From NCBI RefSeq assembly GCF_023055435.1, contig NW_025964112.1:54622001-54686000 (forward strand): a stretch of DNA of 64,000 nucleotides. Reading direction: 5' to 3'. The notes under the pieces are model-generated. The model was not told the origin of the DNA and did not search any database. It saw nothing but the letters and a program-made list of their open reading frames with translations. Positions 1,178-30,600 of the stretch are shown here, in pieces. The number at the start of each line of letters is the position of its first letter. The stretch's first letter is position 1. This stretch comes from Haliotis rufescens (lineage: Eukaryota). The position numbers were made by a program, and so were the translations under genes.

Positions 1178-1267
1178 ATTGAGAGTAAGAAACTTGAATG
1201 GAAAACGGAATCCCGAGTTGGCTCCTTGGATAATACGAAGCACGTGGCAGGCGGTGGTGATAAAAAG
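1178..1267 (+). CDS. tau: tau/MAP2/MAP4-family gene, internal exon A (one microtubule-binding repeat: IESKKLEWKTESRVGSLDNTKHVAGGGDKK)
   Basis: Polypyrimidine tract + CAG acceptor (ttgctttgccag), 90 nt phase 0-0, AAG|GTGGGA donor; translation matches the tau repeat pattern SK/RxGSxxNxxHxxGGG. Confidence 0.9.
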
Positions 1268-2865: not shown

Positions 2866-2955
2866 ATTGAGACTAAGAAACTCGATTGGAAAGTGGAGTC
2901 TCGAGTTGGCTCCATGGATAATGCCAAACATGTTGCAGGCGGTGGTGATATAAAG
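2866..2955 (+). CDS. tau: tau-family internal exon B (IETKKLDWKVESRVGSMDNAKHVAGGGDIK)
   Basis: gctttgctttgccag acceptor, 90 nt phase 0-0, AAG|GTGGGA donor; tau repeat motif; near-duplicate of exon A. Confidence 0.9.
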
Positions 2956-3252: not shown

Positions 3253-5430
3253 GTGTTGAATGCCCGAATTCATTAAAAATTGAACAGAGAGTGCCCAAAG
3301 CATACTGAGTCTTTGATGGCAGTACATGAGTGAAATGAGATGAAATGAGATGAAGATGGTGTACTTTATGGGCAGTGCTGGTGTAGCTTGAGGCGGCATC
3401 CATGTTGTGACAGGCATGATTTGTCAGAATGCCTCTAAGTTGTCTTCTGTTGTTTCAGCGGAGTGTAAGTACCATGAGTGTTTAGATACTCGATATGCTC
3501 TTTTCGAAAAAGGTATCAGGTATTAGTCTTCGAAACTGGATCTATTTTATTAGATCACACAGCACAAAAATTCATCATTTTCTTTCTTTCAGAATAATTG
3601 AAAATGAGCTTTTTGCGTTTATTTTTCCCATGTTAAGATTGAAAGCCACAAATAAGAGTGGAGTTCTGAATCAAAAGTCAGGTCATTTGACAATGCTTAC
3701 CACACTCCAAGAGGGGGAGAAAAGAAGGTAACAGTTTTGTCACCATGGTAACCAACACATCATCATGATTATGTCAACACTTTGTTCTACATGTTTGTAA
3801 CACTGTTATGTTTTTACTTATGATCCATGTGCTAGAGGAGAGTTTATGTCTATTCTTACCTCAGTTGTCATGTGATAGACCCAGTCAGTCTCTGTATCTC
3901 ACCCTTACTTAAACTCTAAACACATCATTTTGCATTTTGCTAAGTCACATTAGATATTCTTTTATTCTTTTATTATTTTTTAAATCATTCAAATTATGAT
4001 CGTTGCAACATATTCATTAACAATAAAATATTAGCTGTTATGTTTAAAAAAAGTTAGGCAAATGAAAAAGGGATAAAAATGAAACTTAGTTCTATTTGGC
4101 ATGGAGTGGTTAATGCTTCCATAAATGCCTAAGGGAGGTAACTCCCTGAGGTTTTATGTAGTCAAGTTAGGCATCCTGGAAGCAGTGTGTTGACACGTTG
4201 CTTGGCCTAGTAGCCAGGCATACGGCCACCTGCCTTCAATGTGAGGGATGGAATCAACTGTGTGCAATAATTCATAAAACTAACCAGAGGTATATAGAAT
4301 TCATTCACCTTGTGAACACGATATATTTCATTAGAAGTTTTACTCTTTAGGAAAATCATTGAAGAATCTGGATGCAAAGACGTAGATTTTTGTCGAGATT
4401 TGACGAATTTCAAACTAAATGGAAGTTAGTAAGCATAAATTATCTGCAGCAAATGTACCAAGCATTATGAGATATGCCTTAAGGGGAACCTTAATTATGT
4501 TGTTTTTTGCTTCTTTATGAACTGTAAGTGAAATATACAACCTGTTATTAGTTTCCAGCATGCATTGGTTTGTTTCATGAAAACATTACATTTCCCTTTC
4601 AAAATGTCACGACTCTTGTCATTACTAATGGATGTAAGCCACCTACCACAGCTTGCATATATGCCTGTACATATAGAGATGGATAGCGATGCAGGTCATT
4701 TTCTAATTTCTCAAATTTTATACTATTTATATTTTTACTGTTTAGTGGTGATATTGAATATGGTAATACAAAAACGTTAGTAGATATGGTAATTTTTATG
4801 TAGAATTAACGTGATGTGTCTTTTTTTCCCAGTTTTTATGATGCTGATATATACCTTCAACTATTTCAATTATAACAATTACGCAATTCTGATTATCAAA
4901 GTTTATTATTATTAGGTAGTATTTATGTTTATACAAACTTTTTTTTATGAGTAATTGCTGTTATTTCTTGAACGTGTATAGATATTTTGTATGTATGGTT
5001 CTCGTTTATTGTGTGACTGCATGTAAAGTGCTTGCTCAGCATCTAATATAGTCTGTGTGGTTACTAACTTTGTGTGAATATCTAATAAAATTCAAATACG
5101 TCTATGGTCCTATAATAAAAATAGAATTCCCTTAGATAACAATGCCAAGCTACAACTGACATTGTCAGATTTGTAATTATTTATATTAATTCAAAAATAT
5201 TTAAATTATTGCAAATAAATTCTGGCTCACTTTTTTTGTATTAAGTTGAAATGTGTAATGCTAACAATAATGCTTTTTCTTTTGGTTTTTGCCAAAATCA
5301 CAAACAAATCTTAAGTCGAATATGTTTTCTGCAACATGTTCCTTTTTCTTGTGAGTAGGATAACACCGAGACAGATTGATATTTCTTCCAATTTTCTTAC
5401 AGTATTTATCTCCCTTTGTTCCAATGCTAG

Positions 5431-5520
5431 ATAGTTTCTGAGAAACTGGATTGGAAAGTCAATTCAGGACTTGGTTACCTGGAAAATGCAAAGCATTCGC
5501 CCGGAGGTCATAAAGTCAAA
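5431..5520 (+). CDS. tau: tau-family internal exon C (IVSEKLDWKVNSGLGYLENAKHSPGGHKVK), divergent repeat
   Basis: ctccctttgttccaatgctag acceptor, exactly 90 nt phase 0-0, AAA|GTAATG donor; KLDWK...NAKHSPGG motif. Not in the ORF track. Confidence 0.85.
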
Positions 5521-6571: not shown

Positions 6572-6661
6572 ATTGTTAACGAGAAAGTAGAATTCAAGGC
6601 CGAGTCGAAGGTGGGGTCGCTGAAGAATGTCAAGCATTCACCAGGAGGAGGCGAGAAAGTG
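6572..6661 (+). CDS. tau: tau-family internal exon D (IVNEKVEFKAESKVGSLKNVKHSPGGGEKV)
   Basis: ccttttcatttgtttcatag acceptor, 90 nt phase 0-0, GTG|GTATGT donor; canonical SKVGS and PGGG motifs. Confidence 0.92.
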
Positions 6662-7261
6662 GTATGTTAACTTCTTTGTGTCAAGGGAGTGTTTGTTTGT
6701 TTGTTTGTTTTGTGTCACACTCAATAATCCTGCTACATCACTGTGTCCTGTGAATAATTTAGTGTCCGCACAAACCAGTGATTAATATTATGAGGAACCT
6801 CACACGCGGTTGGGGTACGATTACAGACAATCATCCAAGTCACGGAACCTGACTACCCAATCACATTTAAGGAAGAGAATTTATGGATGTCAGCTTCTTT
6901 ATGATGAGGAACACAATATTTCAGTGTATCTTGCTATTCCTTCATCCATTCATCTGTAGGAGTAAGCATATACTCCGAAAGGTTGTGTTCCTTATAATAA
7001 AGAAGTTGACATCCATAAATTATTTTCCTTGTAAACGTGTATCACTTCTAAATGCCTTTCAAAGACTCAATCACATTTAGTTGTCTCTTGTTGCAGAGGT
7101 GTAGAGATTATTCATGAATTTACATATTTGATACATGAAGATGCCACAACGTATCGGGTTTGGCAGGTTCAAATATGATGTCATGACATAATCATGCTAT
7201 TACACTTGACGTCATTTTGTAATAATACAGAACATTGTAGCATTTATGCATTGCAAAATAC

Positions 7262-7371
7262 TGAAGATCCGGGGTAGAATAGGTCTTCAGCAACCCATGC
7301 ATGCCGTAACAGGCGACTATGTTTGTCATAAGAGGCGACTCACGGTATGCTACCCTGGATCTTCACAGGTC
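7262..7371. mobile_element. Family D retroposon 5' fragment followed by an inverted second head
   Basis: TGAAGATCCGGGGTAGAATAGGTCTTCAGCAACCC...AAGAGGCGACT on +, then the reverse complement of the same head (TACCCTGGATCTTCACAGGTC). Confidence 0.65.
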
Positions 7372-8394
7372 AGAAACATGTATGCAATTGGTTAGCAAAC
7401 TAAATACCATGGAATCACTGGTAATTTATGTATTATCATAACACACACAATAGTTACTGTTTGATGTTTGATTTTTGAATGTGCCCTGAAGATACATACA
7501 GTCTAGGAATCATCCAACAGATGACATCTTGGTCCTCCAGACAGACAAGGTGTCAATCTGCTGATCAAAGAGTCCATGTCCAGATCCTATTACAGAACCT
7601 CCAAATATATGGGTCCAATATAAACTCTGAAACAGTTTATTTCGAATGTTACGATGTGTGAATGAGTATGGTTGTGCACTGATTTTACTGATATTTCAAC
7701 ACTATACTACAGGGCACACCAGAAATAGGCTTCACACTTTGTACCCATGTGGCAAATCGAATCTTCGGCACAACAAGTGAATGATTTGACCACTAAAAGA
7801 TATGAATAAACGAAACTTGGTATAGATGAGGGTAAATATTTGGACATCGCTTTCGCATATTTTCCACAAGCCCTACAGTGGCATTGATAGGATATTTGAC
7901 ATGATCAAGTCAGCTGTGATCTATGACTATGACTATACAGGAATATCTCCTCTACTTCAAACTGATTCCTATCCAAGCAAACAGCCCTTGATCCACCCTG
8001 CATCAAACATTTATTACAACATAGATTATTTGTCATGTAAATCATCAACCTGGTATTAACGCCTTTGTCTGGATCAGCAAGTCCGGATGCAAACATGGCG
8101 TACCTGATACGCATAACAAGAAAGAAATTTATGGCGCTGGAGAATGTTTCCATGATATTTGCCATGTCCCTACACATGCGAGGGAGAGTATGGATATATT
8201 GTCGGTCATAAACAATACTTGTTGCTCTATCGGGTTGCTATTGGTGCCTACAAGCAAGCGATTCATGTGGAAGTTTCCATGTCAGCCCAAACTGTCACTT
8301 GAACTGAAGTGACAAGTTGAAGAGTATTTATTTATGAATTTATGTCTTTGTGGAAAAAAGGAACCTTTTCAAATTGGTTGGGTCAGTTAGTAAG

Positions 8395-8748
8395 TGAGTG
8401 TGTGCATTAGTGGGTAGGCAGGTGTTTGTGAGTGAGTGAGTGAGTGTTTGGGTGGGTGAGGGAGTGAGTGAGTGTTTGGGTGAGTGAGTGAGTGAATGAG
8501 TGTTGAGGTGGGTGAGTGAGTGTTTAGGTGGGTGAGTGTTTGGGTGGGTGGGTGAGTGAGTGAGTGAGTGTTTTGGTGAGTGAGTGAGTGAGTGTTGAGG
8601 TGGGTGAGTGAGTGTTTGGGTGGGTGAGTGAGTGAGTGTTTTGGTGAGTGAGTGAGTGAGTGAGTGTTTTGGTGGGTGAGTGGGTGAGTGAGTGAGTGTT
8701 TTGGTGGGTGAGTGAGTGAATGAGTGTTTGGGTGAGTGAGTGAGTGGG
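8395..8748. repeat. (GAGT/GGGT)n compound microsatellite, expanded SINE tail
   Basis: Visible tetranucleotide array running into a decayed minus-strand family B SINE body (GGCTTCACACATTTTACCCATGTGGGCAATCGAA). Confidence 0.85.
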
Positions 8749-9516
8749 TTTTTTATACCATTTTTAGAAACAGGCTTCACACATTTTACCCATGTGGGCA
8801 ATCGAAGAGAGATTTAGCATGACAGTTTTTTATGATGAATTTTAAAAAGCTTATGTATCATGAGATTAATATTGCATGATGGTAATTTATTGAGGGTTTT
8901 AGTGAGAATAAATAGGGAGACAACTCATGACATAGGACAGGTGCTTGAAAGAATTACACATGGGGGGGGCAGAACGACACTTAACAGTCATTTACTGTGA
9001 AATTATTGCAATAATTGTATGATTTTCACAACAAGAAAAACACATTGGTGTGTTCATAAGGACATGGACAAGCAGTTATGAAAGAGGGTCTAAATAAATA
9101 TGTTTATTTGGGGACAATAAACGCAATCAGATTAAAAAGTTCAGCCTCTATCATGATAACCATTCCCTTTTGTAGCCGGTTTGTGTTTACCCTATCAGAA
9201 GTCAGTATCTCCTACAGTGTAGTGTGTAGTGGTGTATTGATCAGGTAGTACATTATCCCAATATCTGCCCTAGATGAAACACTGGTGGGCTAATCAGTAT
9301 GCAGGTGCTAACAGGAGCACTATTGACAGGTGTGTTAATTACACCTGACCAAAATAACTGAACCTTATATGTGAAGATAATATTCCTGTAGGTAGATGGT
9401 GCATGGAATACTACTTTCCTGCTCTGAGTATGTAAGTTAAGACATGATAATATAGGTTAAAGCAAAGACGTATATATATACAATACGTCTTTGGTTAAAG
9501 ATTCAAAGATTCAGAT

Positions 9517-9665
9517 TACAGTAAACTACGGTTATAACAAACTCAAAGGGACTACTAATTTTAGTTCGTTATAACCGTACAGCAAATAGTCGGGACCAAA
9601 AAAGTAAGTTCGTTATATCCGTCAGTTCGTTATAAGCGTGTTCCTTATAACCGTAGTTTACTGTA
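9517..9665. mobile_element. pogo/Tigger-type MITE
   Basis: TA-CAGTAAACTACGGTTATAA ... TTATAACCGTAGTTTACTG-TA inverted termini; CAGT ends and TA target duplication. Confidence 0.85.
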
Positions 9666-9935
9666 TTTTGGAGTATTTTTTTTATTTAAGATGTGTTAAA
9701 AATCGTGAGGGCCATAATTCAGTTTAAATTGATTTTGACTTTATGAAGATTTGATATGTAAAGAAATGGAGGGTAATATAGTTGTCTTGGTTTAGGCATA
9801 TGTAATTAGGAGTGAGTGAATGAGGGAGGGCGGAAGGGAGGGAGTATGGTTTTACACTGCTTTTAGAAATATTCTAGAATATCACGGTGGGGGACACCAG
9901 AAATAGGCATCACCTATGAAGTTATGTAGTTAATA

Positions 9936-10066
9936 TATACCACTCAAAAGAAGTTAAGGATCACCTGATTCTTTCATATCACTATAGTTAATCTCTCATG
10001 TCATGACAGATTAACTTTACCATTATGAAAGAATCGGGTGATCCTTAACTTCTTTTGAGTAGTATA
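9936..10066. mobile_element. Fold-back Tc1-type MITE (~130-bp near-perfect hairpin)
   Basis: TATACCACTCAAAAGAAGTTAAGGATCACCTGATTCTTTCATA ... TATGAAAGAATCGGGTGATCCTTAACTTCTTTTGAGTAGTATA. Confidence 0.85.
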
Positions 10067-10100
10067 CATTATAACTAAACTCTCTTGTTCTTCAGTGGAG

Positions 10101-10365
10101 GGGGCACGGGTGGCCCAGTCCTCAAATTTGCCGCGAATTGCGTCCCTTGGCCACGCCAGAAACCTATGAATGTGGGTTTGAATCCCGGTTCACCCCGATT
10201 ATGTTTCTTGGTTTATCAGCACCATACCCGTGCTCGTGGGTTTCACTGAAGTGGTAAACGTCTGAGACCTGCATCACTTCGGGCTTTCCTCCCACATTCA
10301 GCTGACATGCGGTGATATAACTGGAATAATGTTAAAAGCGGCGTTAAACCCAACTCACTCACTCA
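10101..10365 (+). mobile_element. SINE family A, full length
   Basis: GGGGCACGGGTGGCCCAGT head, (CACT)n tail, 11-bp TSD CTTCAGTGGAG (10090-10100 / 10366-10376). Confidence 0.92.
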
Positions 10366-11758
10366 CTTCAGTGGAGATTCAGCATTTAGGGTTACAAGAA
10401 GAAGAATGCATTTGATCATATCTATGCCAATGGTGTATGGTCTCAGATATTATAATTGTTATCCCAGCTTTAGAAGTCTGTACTAAATATGTTAAGCTGA
10501 ATGTATCACGTTTATGGATGTTAACTTCTTTAAATTTAGTAAGCAGTTTTCCATGTAGGTTTTCATACCTTTATTAAATAAATGTCAACTCTTCACAGAA
10601 ACTCATTCACTGAAATGCATTGGTTTGACAGTGAAGATGAAATAATATAAACTGAAATCCCTTGCTTGCTTTGCTTGGCCAAGGTGTATGAATCTCCTTG
10701 TACCAAGTCTCACATGCAGTAACACAGATGCTGGCAACGTCCCGTGCTACACCCATACCTTAACATCCAAAGTACAACCCAGAGAAACTCGAGGAAGAAA
10801 TATTTGAAAACCATGAAATATAGTATGTTTAAAAGAGAAATGTTTTGAAAAACATTTATGTATATATATATAACATGCCAGGCAAAAGAAAGTATACAGC
10901 CATGTCTGACAGTGGATAGAAATGAAAAAACAAGAAATGGTTATTCAATGTATTTCATACGGATGTCATAGTTGTGTTTTAAACCTTTAGTTTGTTAGAT
11001 TTCAGTAACATTGGAATTTCTGTTGTCAAACTCAGTTTTCAAGTGTATAATTTGTTCTATCCAGCAGTTTATATGAAAAATATCCATAATTGTTTAGTGC
11101 ATATGTAATAAATAACAAAATAACAATGTTACTTTGATGTTGAACAAAATCTCTAAAATAATGTCCATAATTGCTTGGTACATACGTACAAATTATAGTC
11201 CTCTATATGTCATGTTAATATCCCTGCCGGTTGCAAGTAAGCATGTATAAAATTCCAATCCTGACTCTTATCACTAATCGGCTTATTAATCAATCTCTGA
11301 TCATTGTGCTCCAGGTGACCTAGCTTGCCTTCAGCAGGTGAAGGACTGTACTTGCTAGCATGCAACTGCAAATGTTTTATTGTAATCTGCAGTCAGATTG
11401 TTATCAAGGAATTAAAGCAGTAAGGCACAAAATCTCTTCCACGACCCACAGAGTCACAGGAGGTCTAATTCTGGCTGAAACATTTGCAGTCAACACTGTA
11501 CAGGGGGTCCAGGGGGTCTTCGGAGTCGCCATTGATGTGATAGGTATTGCAGTACATCTGTCATTAATACATTATATGTTTAGATGACAGTGTTCAGAAT
11601 ACCTGTTTTCCCAATCGTCCGAGATGGGCTGTTTTTGTATTGGACAGTCAATTATTAAAAAAATTATAAGTTTTAAAACATGCACATCCTATGATCTGGC
11701 TGTTTTTTTTATGGATTTATTTGATAAGATAAAGCTTATGACCTTATATCATGTATGT

Positions 11759-12140
11759 GACTGCCTCTGTGGTCTTGGGGATTGAGCATCCGTCCGGAGA
11801 GTGGAAGGTCCGGGGTTTGATCCCCGGCCACGTCCTACCAAAAGACGTTAAAAGATGTACTTGTACTCTGCCTGGTGCTTGGCATTAAGGGATAAAACAA
11901 GGACCGGTCGGCTCGGAGTCAGTATACTGTGTCTGAGTAGGGTATCCATGTTAAACTGCCGTAGTGGGATGACACTATGAAACTGACATTAGAACGAACG
12001 AGTACAAGCAGTCGAACACACACACACATGCCACCACACACAACCATGCCACGTTGCTATATATATACAATAATCTTGAACCTTACGTTAAACCCCATTT
12101 CACCTTAACTGACCCCATCTGACCTGACCGCACCTCACCT
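11759..12140 (+). mobile_element. SINE family C (tRNA-like head, central GTCATACCAAAAGACGTTAAAAGATG-type domain, (CACCT)n tail)
   Basis: A/B-box-like head (GTGGTCTTGGGG...GGTTTGATCCCCGG); homologous copies at 45812, 49160, 53765, 57539 and 41531. End coordinates approximate. Confidence 0.8.
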
Positions 12141-15100
12141 CATGTGGCATTTAGATGATGACCCAAAATCTGGACTGGCAACTATTTAACTAGACTTTGA
12201 CTGGCAATTTATTAGAGTTGCCCATCCGACTGTCTGGCTGGAATTTGTCTGAATTTTAAACACTGGTCTATCATGATATGACAAATGGTTCATTGTTTCA
12301 GTCCTACCACTGATTCGGCCATTTAATAACATTGGTAAACTTGATACAGTAGACACTGAAGAGGAACTCTCTTTGTACAAAATGACAACAATTTGATAGT
12401 TTACCCATTTTTATTCAAATACCGTATTCGACATAAGTGCCCAGGACGCTCTCAAAATTAGAAATAGGGGGCTTTTATTAGAATATTATTTTGGTGAAAA
12501 ACAACAGAGTTGAAAGATCGTAAATTTCGTGACAGCCTGAAATGCATGTTTATATACGACAGATATATTTTTCCAGAATTGAATTTCCCATGATTAAGGA
12601 TGCATATAACACACGTATATAAATAAGAAGTGGCAAAAGTGAAAAAGTTTGAGTTTCAACAACATTTGAACTGTTTGATAACCAATGAACGATCTCTGGA
12701 CATAAATTTTAAGTCATTCTTTATAGTTTTAATAAGTGTCTCCTATATCAATTATCTAAGGTGCTTATTGTGGCTAAGGTGTAGCCACATTGTCGAGACG
12801 ACCAAAGTCCCCCCCCCCCTACACACACACACACAAATCATGTTTCAAGAATAGATGTTAAAGTGATATGAGTGTACGTGTTCCTATCTATTATGTTCTC
12901 TATATATATGGATATTGGAAGTCCCCATGCCCAGCCATAATGGATGAGTTTCGTACGTATAATTGTATCTTGTCTGTCATGGGTCTTATGTCTTATGTGA
13001 CAGTGAAAGCTCTGTGTACACACAGGATAACTTGGCTACCTCTATTCTCAACTTTATAACTGTCAGGTGCTACTCCAGACGGCAATATCACACCTGTTTG
13101 ATCAAAAGGATCTTTACTTTAGTATATATTGAGTCAAAATATATAAGAACAATCTGTTTCATTGGAACTTGAGAACTGACAAGGTTCCTTAATGGGTTTT
13201 TTAAGTCAAAGTCAAACCATTTTGTTTATAGTTTTGCAGGTGATTTTGCACCAAATCTTTTTGTTAAAAAAATGTAGAAAAATGGTGTTTTTGATTGAAA
13301 ACACTTTTGTTGGTATTTTTTACCAATCTTTTTTTCTTCTCCTTCACAAAGTAAACAGATACCCAGTCACAATCAAAGATTCCCATTGACATAATGTAGA
13401 ATTGGGGATAATATTTTTTGTCTGTAAGTGTGTTTTGCCCTAAACAATAATGCTGATGACAATTCTTTTTTGCTCTAAAGAGTTCTTTGAAAATCCTAAA
13501 TAACATGTAATGATTAGTGGATTTAATTTCTTAAAACATACTTTGATAATTATACTTTACGTAGATCCCAGGCTGATAAGCAATCATTCTATGATTAAGA
13601 CCGTATCATGATCCCGTGGGCTGGGACATTAAGCCTCAAGCTACTGCTATTTTGTTCAGTGTTCACTGTGAGACAGCCAATGTATGAAAGACGAGACGTC
13701 ATGATCAAGGTCAGAGATTACGAGAACTACATGTGCAGTCAAGAACGCACGAATCTATCTTCCACTTTCTTAAGATACCAAATTATCAATGATCGTTTCA
13801 TATCTTATGTTGGATCTCCAGGAATTAAATGATCTGAAATGGTTTGCCAGGGAACTAAGTGTAATAGATATGACCTTTAACTTGTGACAGAACCTGGCAT
13901 AGCTTCAACAAAACCTTTCTCACCTTTACACGTATTAATTTACTGGATTTGACCCAGAGACGCTTTTACATATGTGTAGGAACATTGCCCTTTCAATAAA
14001 TGGAGAAAAGAGAAGGCAGAGGTTTGAACATAGGGAGATATAGATATACAAATGTAGACAAGGATATACAAAGGTAGATATACAAAGGTAGATATAGGCA
14101 TGAGGTATTATTTGTATAGTGATTCTCCACACCCGGTAACTGTCAAATAGTTGCCAGTGTCTTGGATACGAAAGAAAGGCTTTGTTGTAAATAAACACTC
14201 TTTTGTTGGCCATTTAATGGAGGCCCTATCTGTCAAGAGGGCAATGTTTGAGTTTGATAGTGAAATCAAAATGCCATTCAACTGAACAAAATAGGTATTA
14301 TATTGAACGACATGATGTATAGGGTGTATATCTCTAATCACTGTTTGCCTTGCTGTAATAGGTTGGCAAATACTCCACTCAGACGGTTAGTGTACCATTT
14401 CTCTGACGTTCACCCCTACTCAATGTGGGTCAGACTCAATTGAAAGTTTTCAGATAAGAGCACTTTAAATGAACTAAGTTTTCTCACAGCTGGATCAGTG
14501 GGTTTTACAAGAAGCGTTACGTAGGGCAGAGATTACTGAAATGGCTCTCTTGTATTTTAATCTTATTGATTATGGGATCTTGTGGAGCCAGAGGAGGAAC
14601 TGAGCCAGAGAGTGACTTAACGACACAGATTTCCCGGATTTGATACATGCTTGGTTGAGCAGGTGATTGGTGAGAGCAGACGCACGGTAGCAGACGTCAG
14701 TTGACCACAGAAGCAGACGTGAGTTGACCATACTAGCAGACGCGGAAGGCTCAGAGACAGTCACACCTTGTTGTGAATGGTGAAGTTAATATTGACATTA
14801 CAGGATCACTGCTAGTCAATCGCTGTTGATTAAATTTTGATGTTGGAGGCCATCTTCAGGACACAGCTCAAAAGGATTTCTCTAGTAGATACATATTGTC
14901 GTCTGTGTGCCATCATGACATGTCGAATAAGTGGATTTTGTCAGGACGTCAATTTTGGTAATTATCTTTGAAGCAGATTTTTTTAAATCAGCCTAGTCTT
15001 AGCGAACATGGGTTTATTTCTCATTGAATTTCCTATTGATTCCTGCATGGGTATCAGTGTCAACATTTGTCAGTTTTCAAGACATACAAGCACGGATGAA

Positions 15101-15250
15101 ACAACATAATGCAAGCATGTCCATACTGTGTCTCTGCAGCAAATAGAGGATGGCGAGGGTTGCTAAAAGTTATGGAGAGCACTTATCACCTGAATACTTC
15201 ATATTCTTGATGCTACTTCTTAAGGGGACATTCTAAGCTGGTGTTTCATC

Positions 15251-16420
15251 ATGACAAAGAGGCCGATACGTGTCATTCCATTGGTCTCTGATTCAGAGAG
15301 CCGGTGGAAGTTTGGCCCTGTTCGGAAGAGTGACTATTTATCACAAGGGAAATCCTCTAAGAATGACACAGTTCCGTATGTGTCTGTCAAGCGACGGAAT
15401 GATGGGAAATATGTTGTGGTAGAGAAATATCCAAGGAAGTTAAAACCAGTGAGTAAGCTGAACTCCCATAATGCACCACTTGCTCACATGGATTATTCGT
15501 CAGAAGTGAAATTCCGATCCATTAAACCAGATTGGAAGTATTCACAACGCCATAGAGTGCTTGGGGACCATGATAACAGCAGTCTCCTGCCTCCCATTGA
15601 CCTAGGGTGGACATCAGATTCTAAGATTGGATCCTGGGAGAACTTTGAGCATACACCTCGAGGAGGTGATAAACAGATTGTCAGTCGTAAACTTAAATGG
15701 GAGGCCAAGGCAAAGATAGGATCCCTGGACAATATTGACTTTGCACAGAGGACAGGAAGAAGTCTTAGTGATCCCACAAGTAGTCGTACACTTGAACCAT
15801 TAGAAAAAACTCCACGAAAGCTCCGTGTCACACCTCGGTATGGAGCTATAGGAGATGCAGGAGCTTTTGGAAACAAACACTACACACCTGGTGGAGCTGA
15901 GGTCGTGCGGCCCTCAGAGAGTTATAATCATATTAAATCAAAAGTTGGATCCTTAGATAATGTTGATCACCAGCCCATGGGAGGGGGTCTGAGAATCCCA
16001 ACATACTCCCAGAACTGGCAAGCAGAGTCCCGAATCAGATCCCTGGAGAACGTGCACCACAGACCAGGAGGCGGGGATGTCATCTTCCTTCAGGAGAAAC
16101 TGCAGTGGAACTCTGGGCCAAAGGTGGGATCTCTGGACAACATCGACCACATCCCTGGTGGAGGCCACAAGAAGATCCTCAACATGAAGCTGAACTGGCT
16201 GTCAGGATCCAAGATTGGATCCTTGCAGAACCTCCATCACGTACCGGGTGGGGGGATGGTGAACATGCCTGACCATCCCCTCCGCTGGAAGGCAAAAGCT
16301 AAGGTGGACAATAAACCAAAGAAGAAGAAAAGGATTTCAGAACTGAATTTGTCATTTGATTCATTAGATTCCTACGAGTGTGAGTATGTTGACATAGTGA
16401 CTGGTAGAGCCACACTGTGA
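15251..16420 (+). CDS. Intronless tau-like microtubule-binding repeat protein (389 aa) nested in the last intron of the tau-family gene
   Basis: Longest non-repetitive ORF in the window. Contains SKIGSWENFEHTPRGG, AKIGSLDNI, NKHYTPGG, SKVGSLDNVDHQPMGGG, SRIRSLENVHHRPGGG, PKVGSLDNIDHIPGGG and SKIGSLQNLHHVPGGG, the last four at 30-aa spacing; in-frame TAA at 15221-15223 upstream of the ATG. Confidence 0.9.
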   Translation: MTKRPIRVIPLVSDSESRWKFGPVRKSDYLSQGKSSKNDTVPYVSVKRRNDGKYVVVEKYPRKLKPVSKLNSHNAPLAHMDYSSEVKFRSIKPDWKYSQRHRVLGDHDNSSLLPPIDLGWTSDSKIGSWENFEHTPRGGDKQIVSRKLKWEAKAKIGSLDNIDFAQRTGRSLSDPTSSRTLEPLEKTPRKLRVTPRYGAIGDAGAFGNKHYTPGGAEVVRPSESYNHIKSKVGSLDNVDHQPMGGGLRIPTYSQNWQAESRIRSLENVHHRPGGGDVIFLQEKLQWNSGPKVGSLDNIDHIPGGGHKKILNMKLNWLSGSKIGSLQNLHHVPGGGMVNMPDHPLRWKAKAKVDNKPKKKKRISELNLSFDSLDSYECEYVDIVTGRATL

Positions 16421-16421
16421 C

Positions 16422-16523
16422 GTGCTTGTTACCACTTTAGGAATGTAGAGTGGTAGTGCATGTTACCACTTTAGGAATGTAGAGTGGTAGTGCTTGTTAC
16501 CACTTTAGGAATGTAGAGTGGCA
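16422..16523 (+). repeat. 34-bp tandem repeat x3, each unit a stem-loop
   Basis: GTGC[T/A]TGTTACCACTTTAGGAATGTAGAGTGG[T/C]A three times, directly after the TGA of the nested ORF. Confidence 0.9.
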
Positions 16524-18262
16524 GTGTAGATACTGTTTACTGTACATGTAACCTCTTCACTAGAATAGATTTCTGTCTTTCTTCTGCAAAAATCACAGAA
16601 CCATTTTATGCTATGAGTAAAGATGCTTTGTTAGTTAATGTGGATGGTTAGACCAAATCAATAACTGATCAATTAGCAAGTCATCTATTACTGGGTGGGG
16701 TGGGGTGGAGGTTTTTGATGAACTACTGCACTGAAAATAATTACCCTCCCCTCATGCTTGTCATATTTGTAGATGACACTACCCATATCCCTGTACATTT
16801 TTTTTTTACCTTCCCTGAAAAGACAAAATGCAAGAGCAGTTTACATTTTTGTATGTAATATCCATTTTCTCATGCCCAAACCCCAAATATGTGTATTATT
16901 TTCTATGACCCTCCCCTAGAAACTGTCATAATCTTGGTGACGCTACCCTTTGACCCACCCCTATAGTAAATGAGACAACTGGTTTTCAAATAGCTTACTT
17001 TTAATGATGTTATTATTATTTTCTCAAAGAAAGTGTAAAAGAAAATTAAAAACAGAACTATTCAGTGTTTGAATTAAGGTAACTTTAGCTTCTATCCTTG
17101 GTATTGTTTCTGCTTTTGCCTAATCTATTGTAAAATATCGTTCAGTGGCGTTTTAGAAGCTGTAGCAATGAAGACAAAAGTTGACTAATGGATTTCAAAT
17201 TCTTTTATTTCTCAATGTGACATTTCGGTAAAAGTGTAGATACCTTTATCAAGCAAGTGAAAGAACAAGTGGTCAGGACATGGTCATATAGCCAAGATCA
17301 CATACACAACACACGATAGAGGTGCATAGTGAGCCTTATAGGGACTGGGCCTGTAACAAGGCTGATGCAGTGTGTTGTTACAGTGTGTGACTCTAGTAGA
17401 CGATGATTGTTCCATGGCAACAGTTAGGTGACTACCCTCTTCATCTGCATCCTCTTGCAACCATCTGGAGGAACATGTATAGCATCCTCCTTTCAGCATG
17501 TATCGGTAGTAATTTAGATATATATCAAAATGAGATCAATATATATGTAAACATTTTCAAGAGAAAAATGGAGAATGAGAATGATCTTTTTGTTATATCC
17601 AATATTTTTTGTACTTAGATGATATAAAACTTCAACGCCAGTGAATAACCAGCCTTGATTATAGGACAAAACATATTTCATTGGGCATAAAAGGCAAAAT
17701 AATTATTTTTTTCAATTTAAAAAATTAAATAAAAAAATATTTTAAATAATAGGCAAAATAGTGGTAAAAATTATTTGAATGCATCACAGAAAATCAGTGA
17801 CACCAGGTGTTCACAAGAAAGGAAGTGCTCAGCTCTTTTTCAGGTCAATGTCATCCCCTCGCCATTCACATCACTGTCATTTACTCTATGCCTGTGACTA
17901 TCTTAGAGACCACTGCTCTCTGCAGAATGTATGCACCAGACATTGAAAGCTCTTGACTTGTGTGAGAAATAGCGAAAAAAAGGAATAGTAAATAATGTCA
18001 TAGCAACTGTTTCAAACTCTTTGTGTGTGCTTTTTTTATAATGATAAGTGCTTATGCTAATGTTCATTTGTCAATAAATGAATGCATAGTTTTACTCTAC
18101 TTTCTCATCTTTCATATTCTGTAGCAGTCCCTGCAAGGATACGAATCCCTGATTCTGTCCGGTTGTCATCCTTAACTTCTCTGCACCATGTAGTCATTCA
18201 GTGTAACTGTAAACATGGACAACTTTGTCACTGTTCACTTTCCTCCAACATCACTACTGACG

Positions 18263-18717
18263 GATAATATAAGGGTAATGTTATTTTTCAGGGCATTATC
18301 ATTTGCAGAAGCTCGAGGTCTTCCATTAACTGCCCGACGAAGGAGGCCAGTTGAAAAGACCGAGGGCTTTTGCAAATGACAATGCCCTGAAAAAGAGCAT
18401 CACTGTTATTATAGCTAAAATGGATGGAATTTGTTATCAAATAAAAAGAAACAACAATATCGTTTTTGAAACATTTACTGCAATCAACACGAATGTCACT
18501 GACCCACTTTTACAAATATGGAAATGTCATAGAACAAACCAGATGACGTCACTATTGAACGTGACGTCACCTATCCCTACCCTATGACATCACCTAACAA
18601 TGGGCATGATAATGGCCCATCGTCAAGCAATATGAGGGCATTATCATTTTACAGTTGCCCACTGATTTTTGATAACATGCAGGTGGTTTAATAATAATTC
18701 TATCCATTTTAGCTATA
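18263..18717. mobile_element. Unclassified non-autonomous DNA element with a long palindromic head and a second inverted-repeat pair
   Basis: Hairpin TTTTTCAGGGCATTATCATTTGCAGAAGC...GCTTTTGCAAATGACAATGCCCTGAAAAA (18284-18394); inverted repeats TATAGCTAAAATGGATGGAATT (18410) / AATTCTATCCATTTTAGCTATA (to 18717). Confidence 0.65.
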
Positions 18718-19653
18718 AAACAAAGATACTGTTAATAACACCAACAGGGTGCATATATATATCATATAGTAACAGGGTGTATGTATCATATATAGCATCA
18801 GGGTGTCTACCAGGGTATATCACATGGGGTTTATCGATCATTACAGTCCAAGAGTATGGTTGCACATTACACTGATTTCTATCGTTGACAGACACACCTG
18901 AAGTGCTGACATCAATAAACATATGAAGTGGTGTTTACCTGTTTCCACCTTGTTGCAACTGAACTCCATGCATAGGTTAATTACAGTTAAGTCAGCTGTC
19001 GGGTACCTGATGCTACACAAGGCGAACTCCTAAAACACTGGTCTTATTAATATGAACTTTATGAAGTTTCATAGTGTCTTCACAGGCTTAGAAATAATAG
19101 TAAACTCCATGGCAAGTCAGGCCATTGTATTACTCTCTTGAATAACATCAAAGTCAATATTGATAAAAGAACAACACTGTCCTATTACCTGCCTGCACCT
19201 GGACTATTAACCTAGGCCCTCCCAGACGTCATACAGTGACTTCTCTTTACACTGGTGCAAGGCTCTTTCATACATGTGCTGCAGTAGTGTTGAATGAACA
19301 CTGACTGTACAATAGTACCTCAGTACAAACAAGTCATGTCATGGCCTACAGTCATGGTGGAGTTGACTCTTTTCTGTTCTACCAAGTTTGGTTATCTCTG
19401 CTGCTGTCAGTGCGACTCAGTATGTGGTTGAAATGCAGTTTGATCCAGACATGAGTTGAGGTGTCAGCACAATACTGATAGGTGCACAAGCAAGTTTGTT
19501 AATGCATTACAGCAATAATGCAACAACAAGATCTAAAGAATCAGCCTCACACATTTGACTCAAATTGTGCCTGTAGACAGAACTAACGTTGAGGGCTTAT
19601 GTTGGTTTTCTAATTGACAAAGGGTGTTATAGCACTGACACACACAAGCACAC

Positions 19654-20755
19654 ACTGTTCAGCTCATGTGGATTGGTGACTGTTCAGCTCATGTGGATTG
19701 GTTGACTGTTCATCTCATGTGGATTGGTTGACTGTGTAGCTGATGTGGATTGGGTGACTGTTCAGATCATGTTGATTGGGTGACTTTTCAGATCATGTAG
19801 ATTGAGTGACTGTTCAGCTCATGTGGATTGAGTGAGTGTTCTGCTCATGTAGATTGGTTGACTGTTCAGCTCATGTGGATTGGGTGACTGTTCAGCTCAT
19901 GTGGATTGGTTGACTTTTCAGCTCATGTGGATTGGTGACTGTTCAGCTCATGTGGATTGGGCAACTGTTAGGCTTATATGGATTGGGTGACTGTTCAACT
20001 CATGTGGATTGGGTGACTGTTCAGCTCATGTGGATTGGGTGACTGGTCAGCTTGTGTGGATTGGGTGACTGTTCAGCTTGTGTGGATTGGGTGACTTTTC
20101 AGCCTGTGTGGATTGGGTGACTGTTCAGCTTGTGTGGATTGGTTGACTGTTCAGCTAATGTGGATTGGGTGACTGTTCAGCTTGTGTGGATTGGTTGACT
20201 GTTCAGCTAATGTGGATTGGGTGACTGTTCAGCTTTTGTGGATTGGGTGACTGTTCATCTTGTGTGGTTTTGGTGACTGTTCAGCTCATGTGGATTGGGT
20301 GACTGTTCATCTTGTGTTGATTGGGTGAATGTTCATCTTGTGTGGATTGGGTGACTGTTCAGATCATGTGGATTGGGTGACTGTTCATCTTGTGTTGATT
20401 GGGTGACTGTTCAGCTTGTGTGGATTGGGTACTGTTCAGCTCATGTGGATTGGGTGACTATTAAGCTTGTGTGGATTGGGTGACTGTTCAGCTCATGTGG
20501 ATTGGTTGACTGTTCAGATCATGTGGATTGGGTGACTGTTCAGATCATGTGAATTGGGTGACTTTTCAGAACATGTGGATTGGGTGACTGTTTAGCTCGT
20601 GGTTTGGGGGACTGTTCAGCCAATGTGGATTGGGTGACTGTTCAGATCATGTAGATTGGGTGACTGTTCAGCTCATATTGATCGGGTGACTGTTCAGCTC
20701 ATGTGGATTGGGCAACTGTTAGGCTTATATGGATTGGGTGACTGTTCAGCCCATG
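19654..20755. repeat. 26-bp minisatellite (GACTGTTCAGCTCATGTGGATTGGGT), ~42 copies
   Basis: Directly visible tandem array inside the last intron. Confidence 0.95.
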
Positions 20756-20918
20756 CAAGCAATCACTGGGTCGACTCATTTATTGTCATAAAGTTTCACC
20801 ATTCATTCAAATATTAATGTAGACAGATGCGATTGAAGACTGAGTGTTAAATAGCCTGCATCCAATGTCATTGGGCTTGCTGATTGAAGATTTTAGATTC
20901 AATTCTTCAAATCAACTC

Positions 20919-21175
20919 GGGGGGACACGGGTGGCCCAGTCGTCTAAGGTGCTGCGATTCGCTGTGCAGAGTTGCGTCCCTTAGGCACACTTGCGTTCGA
21001 ATCCCGGTTCGTCCCGAATATGTTTCTAGGTTTGTCAGCACCATACCCGTGCTTGTAGGTTTCACCGAAGTGGAAAAGGTCTGAGACCTGCATCACTTCG
21101 GGCTTTCCTCCCATATTAAGCTGACACGCCGTGATATAACTGGAATACTGTTAAAATACCAACTCACTCACTCAC
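20919..21175 (+). mobile_element. SINE family A (head with internal deletion)
   Basis: 12-bp TSD TCAAATCAACTC (20907-20918 / 21176-21187); body matches the other copies. Confidence 0.92.
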
Positions 21176-21718
21176 TCAAATCAACTCAGCATTGCCCTGT
21201 TCATGGTTTATATACATGATTTCCTCCATCACCAGTAAATACATAGTCGCTGTCAACAAATAATGCCACGGGCTGCTTTCATTGAGAGGGAAACCAGATT
21301 AAATATTGGCAATATTTCTCATGCTACATGTGCCAAAGCCTTGATGGCATCTACTCTACACATTGCAATATCAGGAAACACTAGGGTTTGCACAAAGTGT
21401 AATCATGCAAGGGGATCCATCATTTGTAAAAGGGAGGGGTCCAAGTTATCAAAATGCCTTTGACACCACTCTGGATCCGCCTATGATTCATGGACTAGGG
21501 TTTATTTTACTTCCACGAGCTTTTCACTGCCTCATTTCATAACCTGAATAAAAGTAGACATGCGTCACTACTACACTGAGTAGAGGCCATATGTATTATG
21601 TATTCATGAGTGATGGAGGAATGTACTGCCCAGGAAAGTACAGGCCCTTGACGTATTGATGATGGACGTTAGACTCTGAAATGCTCAAGTTTCTTAATTA
21701 TTACATTATCACCTGCAG

Positions 21719-21847
21719 ATTGAGACGCAGAAACTGAACTTCAAAGAGACGGCTAAAGCCAGAACAAAACATGGGATGAATGATGACAGTTCCTCACGAC
21801 GCAGTGACAGCGTCACCTCTCAGAGTACAACCGATGGGAGCCAGTGA
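21719..21847 (+). CDS. tau: tau-family terminal coding exon (IETQKLNFKETAKARTKHGMNDDSSSRRSDSVTSQSTTDGSQ*)
   Basis: ttatcacctgcag acceptor, phase 0; start aligns with the human tau R' segment IETHKLTFRENAKAKTDHG; TGA at 21845-21847. Confidence 0.92.
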   Translation: METQKLNFKETAKARTKHGMNDDSSSRRSDSVTSQSTTDGSQ

Positions 21848-29674: not shown

Positions 29675-30600
29675 TCATCGAGGCTTGGGACGGTGTATGA
29701 TGTCCTGGTCAAGATGATCCCAGAGATAATCAGTGGGTGACATATCTGTTGCAATGCGATCCCGGTTCGTCCCGATTATGTATCTAGGTTTGTCAGCACC
29801 ATACCCGTGCTCGTGGGTGTCACTGAAGTGGTAAACGTCTGAGACCTGCATCACTTCGAGCTTTCCTCTCACATTCAGCTGATATCAAGCCGTGATATAA
29901 CTGTAATACTGTTAAAAGCGGCGTTAAACCAACTCACTCGCTGTTGCAATGTGGGGCATGGCAGACCATTGAGGTTGTTTGTGGCCAGAAACTGTTGTAA
30001 AGCACGAGCAGTGTGAGGTCTTCCATTGTGGTGCTGATACAAGAGCCCGGAGTTTCGCTGAAATAACGGTAACACGAGGGGGCGTACCACGAGGCCAATG
30101 TAACGCTGGGCATTAAGATTTCCATTAATGACAACCAGTTCTGTCCTCTGTCGGTCACATATCCCACCCCAAACCACAACACAACAACCGCCTAACCGTA
30201 CATTCTCCTGACTACAACAAGGAGCCGTTCTCTCCCCTACACGTCGGCTCTGAACTTCCGCCACCTGTCTCATCAGAAAATAACACTCGTTCTCAGCTAC
30301 GACATTGTGAACGTTGAACTTGGCGTGCCAAACGTAAACGCCGAAGCCGACGTTGCCTCGTCAACGTCATTTCTCTGAAAGGTCGATTGGCCCTGATACC
30401 ATGCTCTTGACGTCAGCGACGTATGGTGTGACGACTGATGACACGCCATAGCGCAGTCAGCGCAGGTGACGTCACAGTGAAGTGCTCCCAAATGGCGGTT
30501 GTGTCTTCCACTTTGTGGCCTGTCTGCATCCTGTAACGCAGTATCAACTTGATGATCGTCGTACAGCGCATGATTCTTGCGACGTGTGCGTCAATGAAAT
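29675..30600 (-). pseudogene. Decayed Tc1/mariner (DD34E-type) transposase, interrupted by a SINE
   Basis: Translated fragments VVVWGGICDRQRTELVVINGNLNAQRY, YQHHNGRPHTARALQQFL and DMSPTDYLWDHL match the Tc1 motifs VWG.I, FQQDNARPHTA and SPDLNPIEHLW. 5' boundary approximate. Confidence 0.85.
29757..29940 (+). mobile_element. SINE family A, 5'-truncated, inserted in the Tc1 transposase
   Basis: 11-bp TSD CTGTTGCAATG (29746-29756 / 29941-29951). Confidence 0.9.

What the first reader, a model, noticed from the sequence alone, without database searches (positions are those of the whole stretch)
15251..16420. A second, intronless tau-like gene nested sense-strand inside the last intron of the tau gene
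Seen: the host encodes each repeat on its own 90-nt exon, with an intron after GG-x-x-x and before I. This 389-codon ORF, lying between host exon D (ends 6661) and the terminal exon (starts 21719), runs through about 7 homologous repeats with no introns at those positions. It has its own ATG with an in-frame stop 30 nt upstream. The two AGs between that stop and the ATG (15223-24, 15236-37) are not in the host's phase 0, so a direct in-frame splice from exon D to the ORF start is not evident. Its repeats carry the same KLxW signature as host exons A-C but are strongly diverged, and the frame is intact, which argues for long-term selection. It has a novel basic N-terminus and a different C-terminus. 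Known: nested genes in tau introns exist (human saitohin in MAPT), but saitohin is unrelated to tau. Inference: an old processed copy of tau, or of a paralog, that landed inside the parent locus and now forms a tau-within-tau unit that may share regulation or compete with host splicing and polyadenylation.
Basis: partly seen in the sequence, partly recalled or inferred. Interest (0 to 1): 0.9.

Follow-up and report, generated by a model that had tools for sequence, protein, structure and literature searches.

The report
Intronless tau-like gene inside tau gene
Red abalone carries a second, short, intron-free tau-like microtubule-protein gene inside the last intron of its ordinary many-exon tau/MAP2-type gene; the short gene is an old paralog kept across snails and bivalves, annotated automatically but apparently never studied.

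Summary
Window 15251-16420 (+) is an intact 389-codon ORF with six Pfam tau/MAP tubulin-binding repeats (E 1.8e-47) and a tau-like R' pseudo-repeat.

The window is Haliotis rufescens. All 11 RefSeq isoforms of the host gene LOC124115086 join exon 6572-6661 directly to the terminal exon 21719-21847. The ORF therefore lies, sense strand, in the 15,057-nt last intron, and no host isoform contains it. These are the only tau-repeat sequences found in the 1.33-Gb genome.

It is not a recent retrocopy. Proteins of about the same length, with the same N-terminal module, occur across snails and bivalves. They form one clade (100/100) apart from canonical tau/MAP2/MAP4 proteins. RefSeq lists it as a separate gene in three other abalones.

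The coding sequence is also uninterrupted in a Mya-like bivalve contig. Linkage or nesting with the host is indicated in Batillaria, Nucella, Mizuhopecten, Dreissena and one unidentified contig, but not in Pecten maximus.

Origin by retroposition is plausible but unproven.

Verdict: a real, conserved, nested paralog; a new variant of a known family; moderate interest.

The parts
15251..16420 (+). Coding sequence of the nested intronless tau-like gene ('T1' family), 389 codons plus stop. Layout: basic N-terminal module with a predicted beta-hairpin (residues 44-58), repeats R1-R2, a spacer holding a degenerate repeat, repeats R3-R6, an R'-like pseudo-repeat, and a short conserved C-terminal tail.
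15221..15223 (+). In-frame TAA 30 nt upstream of the ATG. It blocks read-in from any upstream exon in this frame.
   Evidence: (read directly)
15118..15139 (+). Acceptor-like site (pyrimidine-rich tract ending in CAG; an exon would start at 15140). It could serve a 5'-UTR intron of the nested gene. If used by host exon 6572-6661, it would give a host protein ending after 8 codons. Not shown to be used.
16422..16526 (+). 34-nt tandem repeat, 3.1 copies, directly after the stop codon (presumed 3' UTR).
17045..17050 (+). ATTAAA within an A-rich stretch. It is the only poly(A)-signal-like hexamer between the stop codon and 17700, so it is the candidate 3' end. Not shown to be used.
6572..6661 (+). 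Last tubulin-binding-repeat exon of host gene LOC124115086 (90 nt, AG/GT flanks, phase 0).
6662..21718 (+). Last intron of the host gene (15,057 nt), which contains the nested gene.
21719..21847 (+). Terminal coding exon of the host (R' pseudo-repeat and C-terminus, with stop). It is homologous to the exon encoding the R' pseudo-repeat and C-terminus of vertebrate tau.
1178..1267 (+). Host repeat exon, identical in protein to the copy about 1.4 kb upstream of the window start.
2866..2955 (+). Host repeat exon.

Best explanation
The ORF is the whole coding sequence of a functional, separately annotated gene in Haliotis rufescens. The gene belongs to a distinct, mollusc-wide paralog family (here called T1) of the tau/MAP2/MAP4 family.

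The protein is basic (pI 9.9) and predicted to be intrinsically disordered. It has a conserved N-terminal module containing one short beta-hairpin. It carries six tau-type tubulin-binding repeats, five of them with KXGS motifs, and ends in an R'-like pseudo-repeat. By homology with tau on microtubules, it most likely binds along microtubule protofilaments through these repeats. KXGS phosphorylation probably regulates it. Both of these functional points are inferred, not shown.

The gene lies in the sense direction inside the 15-kb last intron of the canonical multi-exon tau/MAP2/MAP4 homolog, LOC124115086. It most likely arose before gastropods and bivalves diverged, from a spliced tau-type message (retroposition) or by complete intron loss. 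It has stayed linked to, and in several lineages nested in, the parent gene.

It is probably transcribed from its own intronic promoter and ends near 17.06 kb (inferred). Because host transcription must read through it, expression of the two genes may interfere with each other (speculative).
For: The ORF is intact and PF00418 scores 159 bits in 6 stretches.

It matches solved tau chains, including microtubule-bound tau 6CVN/6CVJ, over residues 218-354. It is collinear with vertebrate tau through to R'.

The window is H. rufescens. Eleven RefSeq host isoforms all splice 6661 to 21719, and none holds ORF sequence.

A 389-aa protein is annotated as a separate gene in H. cracherodii (1 residue different), H. 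rubra and H. asinina.

Same-architecture proteins of about 360-520 aa occur in Patella, Lottia, Batillaria, Nucella, Elysia, Pecten, Mizuhopecten, Pinctada, Saccostrea, Crassostrea, Mya and Dreissena, with many invariant columns.

In the tree, T1 (31 rows) separates from canonical proteins (42 rows) at 100/100. Inside T1 the bivalves are monophyletic (99/95) and the snail groups are recovered, which is the pattern of vertical descent.

The coding sequence is also uninterrupted in a Mya-like bivalve genomic contig, L014.

PF00418 occurs nowhere else in the 1.33-Gb genome.

Linkage or nesting elsewhere:
- Batillaria: the gene model runs from the T1 ortholog into the host-type terminal exon.
- Mizuhopecten: host LOC110460313 and T1 LOC110460314 lie on one 1.43-Mb scaffold.
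- Nucella: consecutive locus tags ACOMHN_016955 and ACOMHN_016956.
- H. cracherodii, H. rubra and Dreissena: same scaffold.
- L017: host repeat exon, then an intronless tau-like ORF, then the host terminal exon, all on one strand.

Small contig sets of the same species, guessed to be RNA, hold 66-79% of the words of 14600-17600 in two studies.
Against: There is no direct transcript evidence.

The promoter, the transcription start and the poly(A) site are all inferred.

No retroposition hallmarks remain: there is no poly(A) relic.

In Pecten maximus, T1 and the host are recorded on different scaffolds, so linkage is not universal.

No dN/dS could be computed, because no second Haliotis coding DNA was reachable.

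Microtubule binding is inferred from homology only.
Confidence: 0.75

Rival explanations
1. The ORF is not an independent transcription unit. It is carried on transcripts that start at the host promoter, as an alternative last exon. For example, host exon 6572-6661 could splice to the acceptor-like site at 15139/15140. That would give a host protein truncated after 8 codons, with the T1 ORF as a downstream cistron. Alternatively, splicing could go to an acceptor inside the ORF.
For: The ORF is on the same strand as the host. An acceptor-like site at 15140 lies 111 nt upstream of the ATG. One automated Batillaria model links T1 sequence to a host exon. No transcript data were obtainable.
Against: In-frame stops lie between every upstream acceptor-like site and the ATG. 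None of the 11 RefSeq host isoforms includes ORF sequence. RefSeq models the ORF as its own 389-aa gene in three abalones. The N-terminal module and the start region are conserved as the start of a protein of about 360-410 aa across molluscs. In Pecten maximus, T1 is recorded on a different scaffold from the host, so it can be expressed without the host.
Confidence: 0.12
2. This rival concerns origin only. The intronless family arose by DNA-level duplication of the repeat region inside the locus, followed by complete intron loss, not by retroposition of a spliced mRNA.
For: The copy sits inside the parent locus, as local duplication would predict. The host shows ongoing tandem exon duplication. 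In bivalves, intronless tau-like genes lie in tandem (L014, L016). No poly(A) tail relic or target-site duplication is seen.
Against: Every repeat-boundary intron is absent at once, and the copy runs collinearly through to the R' segment, which the host encodes on a separate exon 15 kb away. That is the signature of a spliced template. After more than 500 million years (dated from general knowledge), loss of retroposition hallmarks is expected.
Confidence: 0.3
3. The ORF is a non-functional processed pseudogene whose frame is open by chance.
For: It has no introns, lies in an intron, and no transcript evidence was obtained here.
Against: The frame is open over 389 codons. Length and architecture are conserved across gastropods and bivalves, with invariant repeat-core residues. 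The phylogeny follows the species tree. Identity is 88-100% among four abalone species, with no frame disruption in any of them.
Confidence: 0.02

Closest known systems
Tau/MAP2/MAP4 family (Pfam PF00418), including invertebrate homologs such as C. elegans PTL-1
   Same: Tandem tubulin-binding repeats of 30-31 residues with KXGS and PGGG cores, a terminal R' pseudo-repeat, basic charge and predicted disorder. The ORF matches solved tau chains, including tau on microtubules.
   Different: It has no projection domain or proline-rich region like the host's. It has its own N-terminal hairpin module, six repeats plus a degenerate one split by a spacer, and a coding sequence with no introns, where the family norm is one repeat per exon. 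It forms a clade apart from all canonical members sampled. PTL-1 is described as the sole family member in C. elegans (PMC4046136), whereas molluscs have at least two kinds.
Host gene LOC124115086 of Haliotis rufescens (canonical tau/MAP2/MAP4 homolog, isoforms of 721-1619 aa)
   Same: Same repeat family, same strand and same locus. Both have W in the KLxW position of several repeats.
   Different: The host has one 90-nt exon per repeat, alternative inclusion in 30-residue steps, a long N-terminal region, and an R' exon 15 kb downstream. The nested gene is a single coding exon of 389 codons.
Saitohin (STH) in an intron of human MAPT
   Same: An intronless ORF nested in the sense direction in an intron of a tau gene.
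   Different: Saitohin is unrelated in sequence to tau and is evolutionarily young. This gene is a tau paralog conserved across molluscan classes.
H13/Mcts2 host/nested retrogene pair in mouse (PMC13309782)
   Same: An intronless retrogene-like gene inside a host intron. In that system, transcription of the nested gene causes premature intronic polyadenylation of the host. It is a concrete model for how this pair could interact.
   Different: Mcts2 is unrelated to its host H13, and the pair is imprinted and mammalian. Here the nested gene is a paralog of its host, and no interaction has been shown.

Membership tests
Tau/MAP2/MAP4 family (PF00418) | Tandem tubulin-binding repeats scoring above Pfam's gathering threshold | tested here: met
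   159.4 bits against a cut-off of 27, in 6 stretches.
Tau/MAP2/MAP4 family (PF00418) | Repeat domain ends in an R'-type pseudo-repeat collinear with tau | tested here: met
   BLASTP against Anolis tau aligns ORF residues 124-353 through to the AKAK[VT]D segment. phmmer matches microtubule-bound tau 6CVN over 218-354.
Tau/MAP2/MAP4 family (PF00418) | KXGS and PGGG motifs in the repeat cores | tested here: met
   Five KXGS motifs, at residues 125, 155, 231, 291 and 321. PGGG or near-variants are visible in the repeats.
Tau/MAP2/MAP4 family (PF00418) | N-terminal projection and proline-rich region homologous to canonical members | tested here: not met
   No BLASTP hit between ORF residues 1-122 and host isoform X1. 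Pfam finds nothing apart from PF00418. The N-terminal module is specific to the T1 family.
Tau/MAP2/MAP4 family (PF00418) | Gene structure with one repeat per exon | tested here: not met
   The frame is uninterrupted across all repeats. The host keeps the exon-per-repeat structure.
Tau/MAP2/MAP4 family (PF00418) | Binds and stabilises microtubules | not testable with these tools
   Needs a biochemical assay. Complex prediction offers no eukaryotic tubulin reference.
Processed retrogene | Lacks all parental introns and is collinear with the spliced parental message | tested here: met
   R3-R6 are spaced exactly 90 nt apart and are followed by an R' segment, with no introns.
Processed retrogene | Poly(A) tract relic and flanking target-site duplication | tested here: not met
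   No run of 7 or more A between 16421 and 17700, only an A-rich patch at about 17025-17058. A target-site duplication was not searched for. Loss is expected at this age, so this does not exclude retroposition.
Nested (host/nested) gene pair | The nested gene lies wholly within one intron of the host | tested here: met
   The coding sequence 15251-16420 lies inside intron 6662-21718, as defined by 11 RefSeq isoforms. The extent of the UTRs is unknown.
Nested (host/nested) gene pair | The nested gene has its own promoter and transcript | not testable with these tools
The only indirect support is separate RefSeq models in three abalones and word shares in runs guessed to be RNA.

The most novel reading that the evidence does not exclude
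A paralog-in-parent unit more than 500 million years old. An intronless tau-like gene has been kept in the sense direction inside the last intron of the canonical tau/MAP2/MAP4 gene since before gastropods and bivalves split. The two genes would be expressed in a mutually exclusive way, because nested transcription and polyadenylation cut off the host before its R'/C-terminal exon. A cell would then choose between a long canonical MAP and a short T1 MAP at a single locus. Bivalves would have expanded the intronless side into further families.
Probability: 0.2. Interest if true: 0.7.

Novelty: new variant of a known kind. Interest (0 to 1): 0.5.

Why it matters
Tau-family biology outside vertebrates is usually framed around a single tau/MAP2/MAP4 homolog. 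PTL-1, for example, is described as the sole homolog in C. elegans (PMC4046136). The one evolutionary survey found here mentions mollusc MAPs only in passing (PMC4815063).

These data show that molluscs, which include classic neurobiology models, carry a second conserved tau-like protein with its own architecture. The canonical gene is 721-1619 aa and alternatively spliced; this one is 389 aa and has no introns in its coding sequence. Bivalves carry further intronless kinds.

The gene is nested in the sense direction inside its own parent. That gives a natural system for asking how a host and a nested paralog share or compete for transcription, splicing and 3'-end formation. It also gives a compact natural tau-repeat protein for comparative microtubule-binding work.

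The gene is already in automated annotations, so the novelty lies in recognising the family, its age and its genomic arrangement, not in finding an unannotated ORF.

Tried and rejected
- **The look-up of encoding contigs:** Gene structures and neighbourhoods of orthologs in other molluscs could not be read directly.
- **Read laying:** After that, no letters of 17709-17747 were sent to any search tool. Later scans stopped at 17700, and those places were masked with N in the local BLAST database.
- **The look-up of sequencing runs:** no holder is on record as RNA. The small contig sets are only guessed to be RNA.
- **N-terminal-only homolog search:** found only the H. asinina ortholog, because the word index is insensitive. 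It is uninformative about the family's range.
- **Protein atlas on residues 1-118:** best scores were 0.79, below the useful level. It returned only PF00418 clusters.
- **AlphaFold2:** mean pLDDT 45.6, so the protein is predicted to be disordered. No fold search was run, because it would be meaningless.
- **Search with the L017 nested ORF:** no close ortholog, so the organism and family of that ORF remain unknown.
- **Paper searches:** searches on accessions and topic found no description of this family or arrangement.
- **dN/dS:** not computed, because no coding DNA of a second Haliotis species was reachable.
- **Joined host model:** I built no joined host coding model myself. Host structure was taken from public RefSeq proteins returned by the searches, mapped exon by exon.
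- **Rejected, chance ORF or pseudogene:** ruled out.
- **Rejected, in-frame alternative host exon:** stops and phases exclude it, and no host isoform holds ORF sequence.
- **Rejected, 'QIE...' after the acceptor-like site at 15140 as a relic of a host exon:** only three residues match, so it is treated as chance.

Full report
**1. The observation**

The window holds an ATG-initiated open frame at 15251-16420 on the + strand, 389 codons long. Apart from frames created by a minisatellite at about 62-63.5 kb, it is the only ORF of that size in the 64 kb. Pfam's tau/MAP tubulin-binding repeat (PF00418) matches it at E 1.8e-47. The score is 159 bits against a curated cut-off of 27, in six stretches.

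An in-frame TAA lies at 15221-15223. The two AG dinucleotides between it and the ATG would start an exon at 15225 or 15238, and neither is in phase with the host's phase-0 donors.

Repeats R3-R6 start exactly 90 nt apart and are uninterrupted.

**2. What the host is, and whether the ORF is truly nested**

A profile search returned a 1589-aa protein, P0130, that maps at about 92-100% identity per exon to the window and the DNA upstream. It is isoform X3 of LOC124115086 of Haliotis rufescens, recorded on a contig of 65,595,138 nt. That is the length of the window's own contig, so the window is red abalone.

The gene has eleven RefSeq isoforms: 1469-1619 aa in steps of 30 residues, plus one of 721 aa named 'microtubule-associated protein tau-like'. 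The H. cracherodii ortholog is also on record. The four H. rufescens isoforms and the H. cracherodii ortholog that were mapped all join exon 6572-6661 directly to 21719-21844. All eleven isoforms end with that exon's peptide, and none contains ORF sequence.

The terminal exon starts after a 'cacctgcag' acceptor. It encodes the R' pseudo-repeat, which vertebrate tau encodes in its R'/C-terminal exon. The ORF therefore sits on the sense strand inside the 15,057-nt last intron, 6662-21718.

The structure comes from public proteins mapped exon by exon.

A whole-genome scan with PF00418 found matches only at C334:54616630-54638255. That interval covers the host's repeat exons plus the ORF. The ORF protein has no second copy in the genome.

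**3. What the ORF is**

It is not private to this genome. Proteins of 389 aa named 'microtubule-associated protein tau-like' are annotated as separate genes in three other abalones:
- H. cracherodii: one residue different.
- H. rubra: 89% identical.
- H. asinina: 88% identical.

Proteins of about 360-520 aa with the same layout occur in many molluscs:
- Gastropods: Patella, Lottia, Batillaria, Nucella, Elysia, Pomacea.
- Bivalves: Pecten, Mizuhopecten, Ylistrum, Pinctada, Saccostrea, Crassostrea gigas (K1QMM2), Mya, Dreissena.

They share these features:
- an N-terminal module (consensus PYVSVKQRKNGQYVVVE, then SEVKFRS-KP-WK, then LPPIDLGW);
- two repeats;
- a spacer with SDP...PRYGA...HYTPGG;
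- four more repeats;
- an R'-like end (L-[RK]-W-K-A-x-[AS]-K-V-D).

I call this family T1.

A maximum-likelihood tree was built on the last four repeats plus R' (73 rows). It separates T1 (31 rows) from canonical tau/MAP2/MAP4 proteins (42 rows) at 100/100. The canonical group includes the abalone, Gigantopelta and Dreissena hosts, Lingula, a sea urchin and vertebrates. Inside T1 the bivalves are monophyletic (99/95), and patellogastropods, abalones, heterobranchs and caenogastropods are recovered.

Caveats on this tree:
- Rows were anchored on group-specific R' motifs, which helps the split.
- Left out: one mis-anchored row (P0049), P0083, P0172, redundant host isoforms (P0292-P0294, P0304, P0306, P0308-P0311), rows more than 90% identical to a kept row, and every protein lacking either anchor (for example the fungal and 'type 2' proteins).
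- The tree is unrooted. It cannot say whether T1 branched off inside molluscs and then evolved fast, or is older.

The pattern shows vertical inheritance since at least the gastropod-bivalve ancestor. That, together with the invariant repeat cores, rules out a pseudogene.

**4. The protein**

It is basic (pI 9.9) and has five KXGS motifs. It aligns collinearly with vertebrate tau through to R'. The 'HYTPGGAEV' segment of the spacer aligns to a tau repeat end, so it is a degenerate seventh repeat. The ORF matches solved tau chains, including microtubule-bound tau 6CVN/6CVJ, over residues 218-354.

AlphaFold2 run with the family alignment gives a disordered model (mean pLDDT 45.6). One beta-hairpin is predicted at residues 44-58, in the conserved N-terminal motif. 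The N-terminal 122 residues have no similarity to the host protein.

The likely function is binding along microtubules through the repeats, as for tau. This is inferred from homology, not shown.

**5. Intronless state and nesting elsewhere**

Intronless state:
- Metagenome contig L014 (7.4 kb) encodes a protein 74% identical to Mya arenaria T1. It carries T1 as one uninterrupted frame.
- On the same contig, 3.2 kb downstream on the same strand, is a second intronless tau-like gene of a different kind, with about 11 repeats ('type 2').
- Contig L016 carries two tandem type-2 genes.

Linkage or nesting:
- **Batillaria:** the model KAK7476997.1 runs from the T1 ortholog, through what reads like a translated polypyrimidine tract plus CAG, into a host-type terminal exon (IETQKLEFRETAKPKTD). 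That exon therefore lies just downstream on the same strand.
- **Mizuhopecten:** host LOC110460313 and T1 LOC110460314 share one 1.43-Mb scaffold and have consecutive gene numbers.
- **Nucella:** host ACOMHN_016955 and a T1-like gene ACOMHN_016956 are consecutive on one scaffold.
- **H. cracherodii, H. rubra and Dreissena:** host and T1 share a scaffold.
- **Contig L017 (8.7 kb, organism unknown):** its host-type exon is 87% identical to scallop hosts. On one strand it shows a host repeat exon with AG/GT flanks, a 523-codon intronless tau-like ORF, and a host terminal exon. This is the same layout as the window, although that ORF has no close ortholog.

Against universality: Pecten maximus T1 and its host are recorded on different scaffolds.

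**6. Transcription**

This is the weak point.

What remains is indirect:
- Seven small contig sets of the same species, from two studies, hold 66-79% of the sampled words of 14600-17600. Three small sets of a second species hold as much as that species' genome-sized sets do. None is on record as RNA.
- Cluster records show a 3,195-nt Logan contig encoding a 99%-identical protein.
- Hundreds of Logan contigs encode the oyster ortholog.
- RefSeq models the gene separately in three abalones.

On the sequence itself:
- The only poly(A)-signal-like hexamer between the stop and 17700 is ATTAAA at 17045, in an A-rich patch.
- An acceptor-like site lies at 15139/15140. If the host used it, the host frame would stop after eight codons.
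- Nothing shows that either site is used.

**7. Origin**

All repeat-boundary introns are absent, and the copy is collinear through R', which the host encodes on an exon 15 kb away. Both fit a spliced template, that is, retroposition. No poly(A) relic survives, as expected at this age. Local duplication with intron loss cannot be excluded, especially as the host locus duplicates exons in tandem.

**8. Comparison and novelty**

The protein meets the sequence-defined features of the tau/MAP2/MAP4 family. It fails two family norms: a canonical N-terminal region and one repeat per exon.

As a genomic arrangement it resembles saitohin in MAPT, but saitohin is unrelated to tau. It also resembles nested retrogenes such as Mcts2 in H13, where nested transcription causes premature host polyadenylation (PMC13309782). 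Here, however, the nested gene is a paralog of its host.

Paper searches found no description of this family or arrangement. The evolutionary survey PMC4815063 mentions mollusc MAPs only in passing.

Because automated annotation already lists the gene, I rate it a new variant of a known kind, of moderate interest.

Noticed in passing
window 5431-5520 (+): A 90-nt tau-repeat exon copy with canonical AG/GT flanks and no stop codon, but degenerate core motifs (G-Y-L-E-N, G-G-H-K). It is in none of the 11 RefSeq host isoforms. It is either an unannotated alternative exon or a decaying duplicate.
   Followed up: partly
window 3632-3727 (+): A tau-repeat exon copy with an in-frame TAA and no AG directly before the I-E start. 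It looks like a dead duplicate exon of the host.
   Followed up: partly
G000:C334:54616630-54628661 (window about -5371 to 6661): The host has about 10-11 repeat exons, several nearly or fully identical in protein (for example the exon about 1.4 kb before the window start and the one at 1178-1267). RefSeq isoforms differ in 30-residue steps. This points to recent tandem exon duplication combined with alternative inclusion.
   Followed up: partly
L014:5845-7203 and L016:2653-4065, 8516-9865: A second kind of intronless tau-like gene ('type 2', about 9-11 repeats, C-terminus ending ...AQTVP or ...PQTIP) lies in tandem with T1 or with itself on bivalve-like metagenome contigs. No such gene exists in the abalone genome (PF00418 scan).
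   Followed up: partly
L017:619-714, 3406-4974, 7027-7098: A contig of unknown origin with the same layout as the window: host-type repeat exon, an intronless 523-codon tau-like ORF, then the host-type terminal exon, all on one strand. A partial duplicate of the terminal exon's start lies at 6983-7012.
   Followed up: partly
L015:1-2709: An open frame of at least 903 codons made almost entirely of tau-type repeats, on a 3.9-kb metagenome contig. Such giant intronless repeat proteins may be common in marine invertebrates.
   Followed up: no
protein hits P0041, P0051, P0063, P0067, P0089, P0091, P0132: Fungal proteins (Glomeromycota, Mucoromycota, chytrids) with 4-8 PF00418 repeats rank among the closest non-mollusc hits. 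One chytrid protein also carries ankyrin repeats.
   Followed up: no
window residues 128-133 of the ORF (15632-15649): In the north-east Pacific abalones (the window and H. cracherodii), the first repeat core reads GSWENF, where H. rubra and H. asinina have GSLDNI. This is a lineage-specific change in an otherwise invariant core.
   Followed up: no
window 62000-63500 (+): A minisatellite whose units give long spurious ORFs in several frames (up to 334 aa), with strong AT skew.
   Followed up: no
window 8340-8801 (-) and 8001-10000: A low-complexity repeat that reads as T-H-S-L/P units on the minus strand. GC skew is 0.37 in this 2-kb bin.
   Followed up: no
window 29875-30273 (-): A 132-aa ORF that looks by eye like a fragment of a Tc1/mariner-type transposase. 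Not tested.
   Followed up: no
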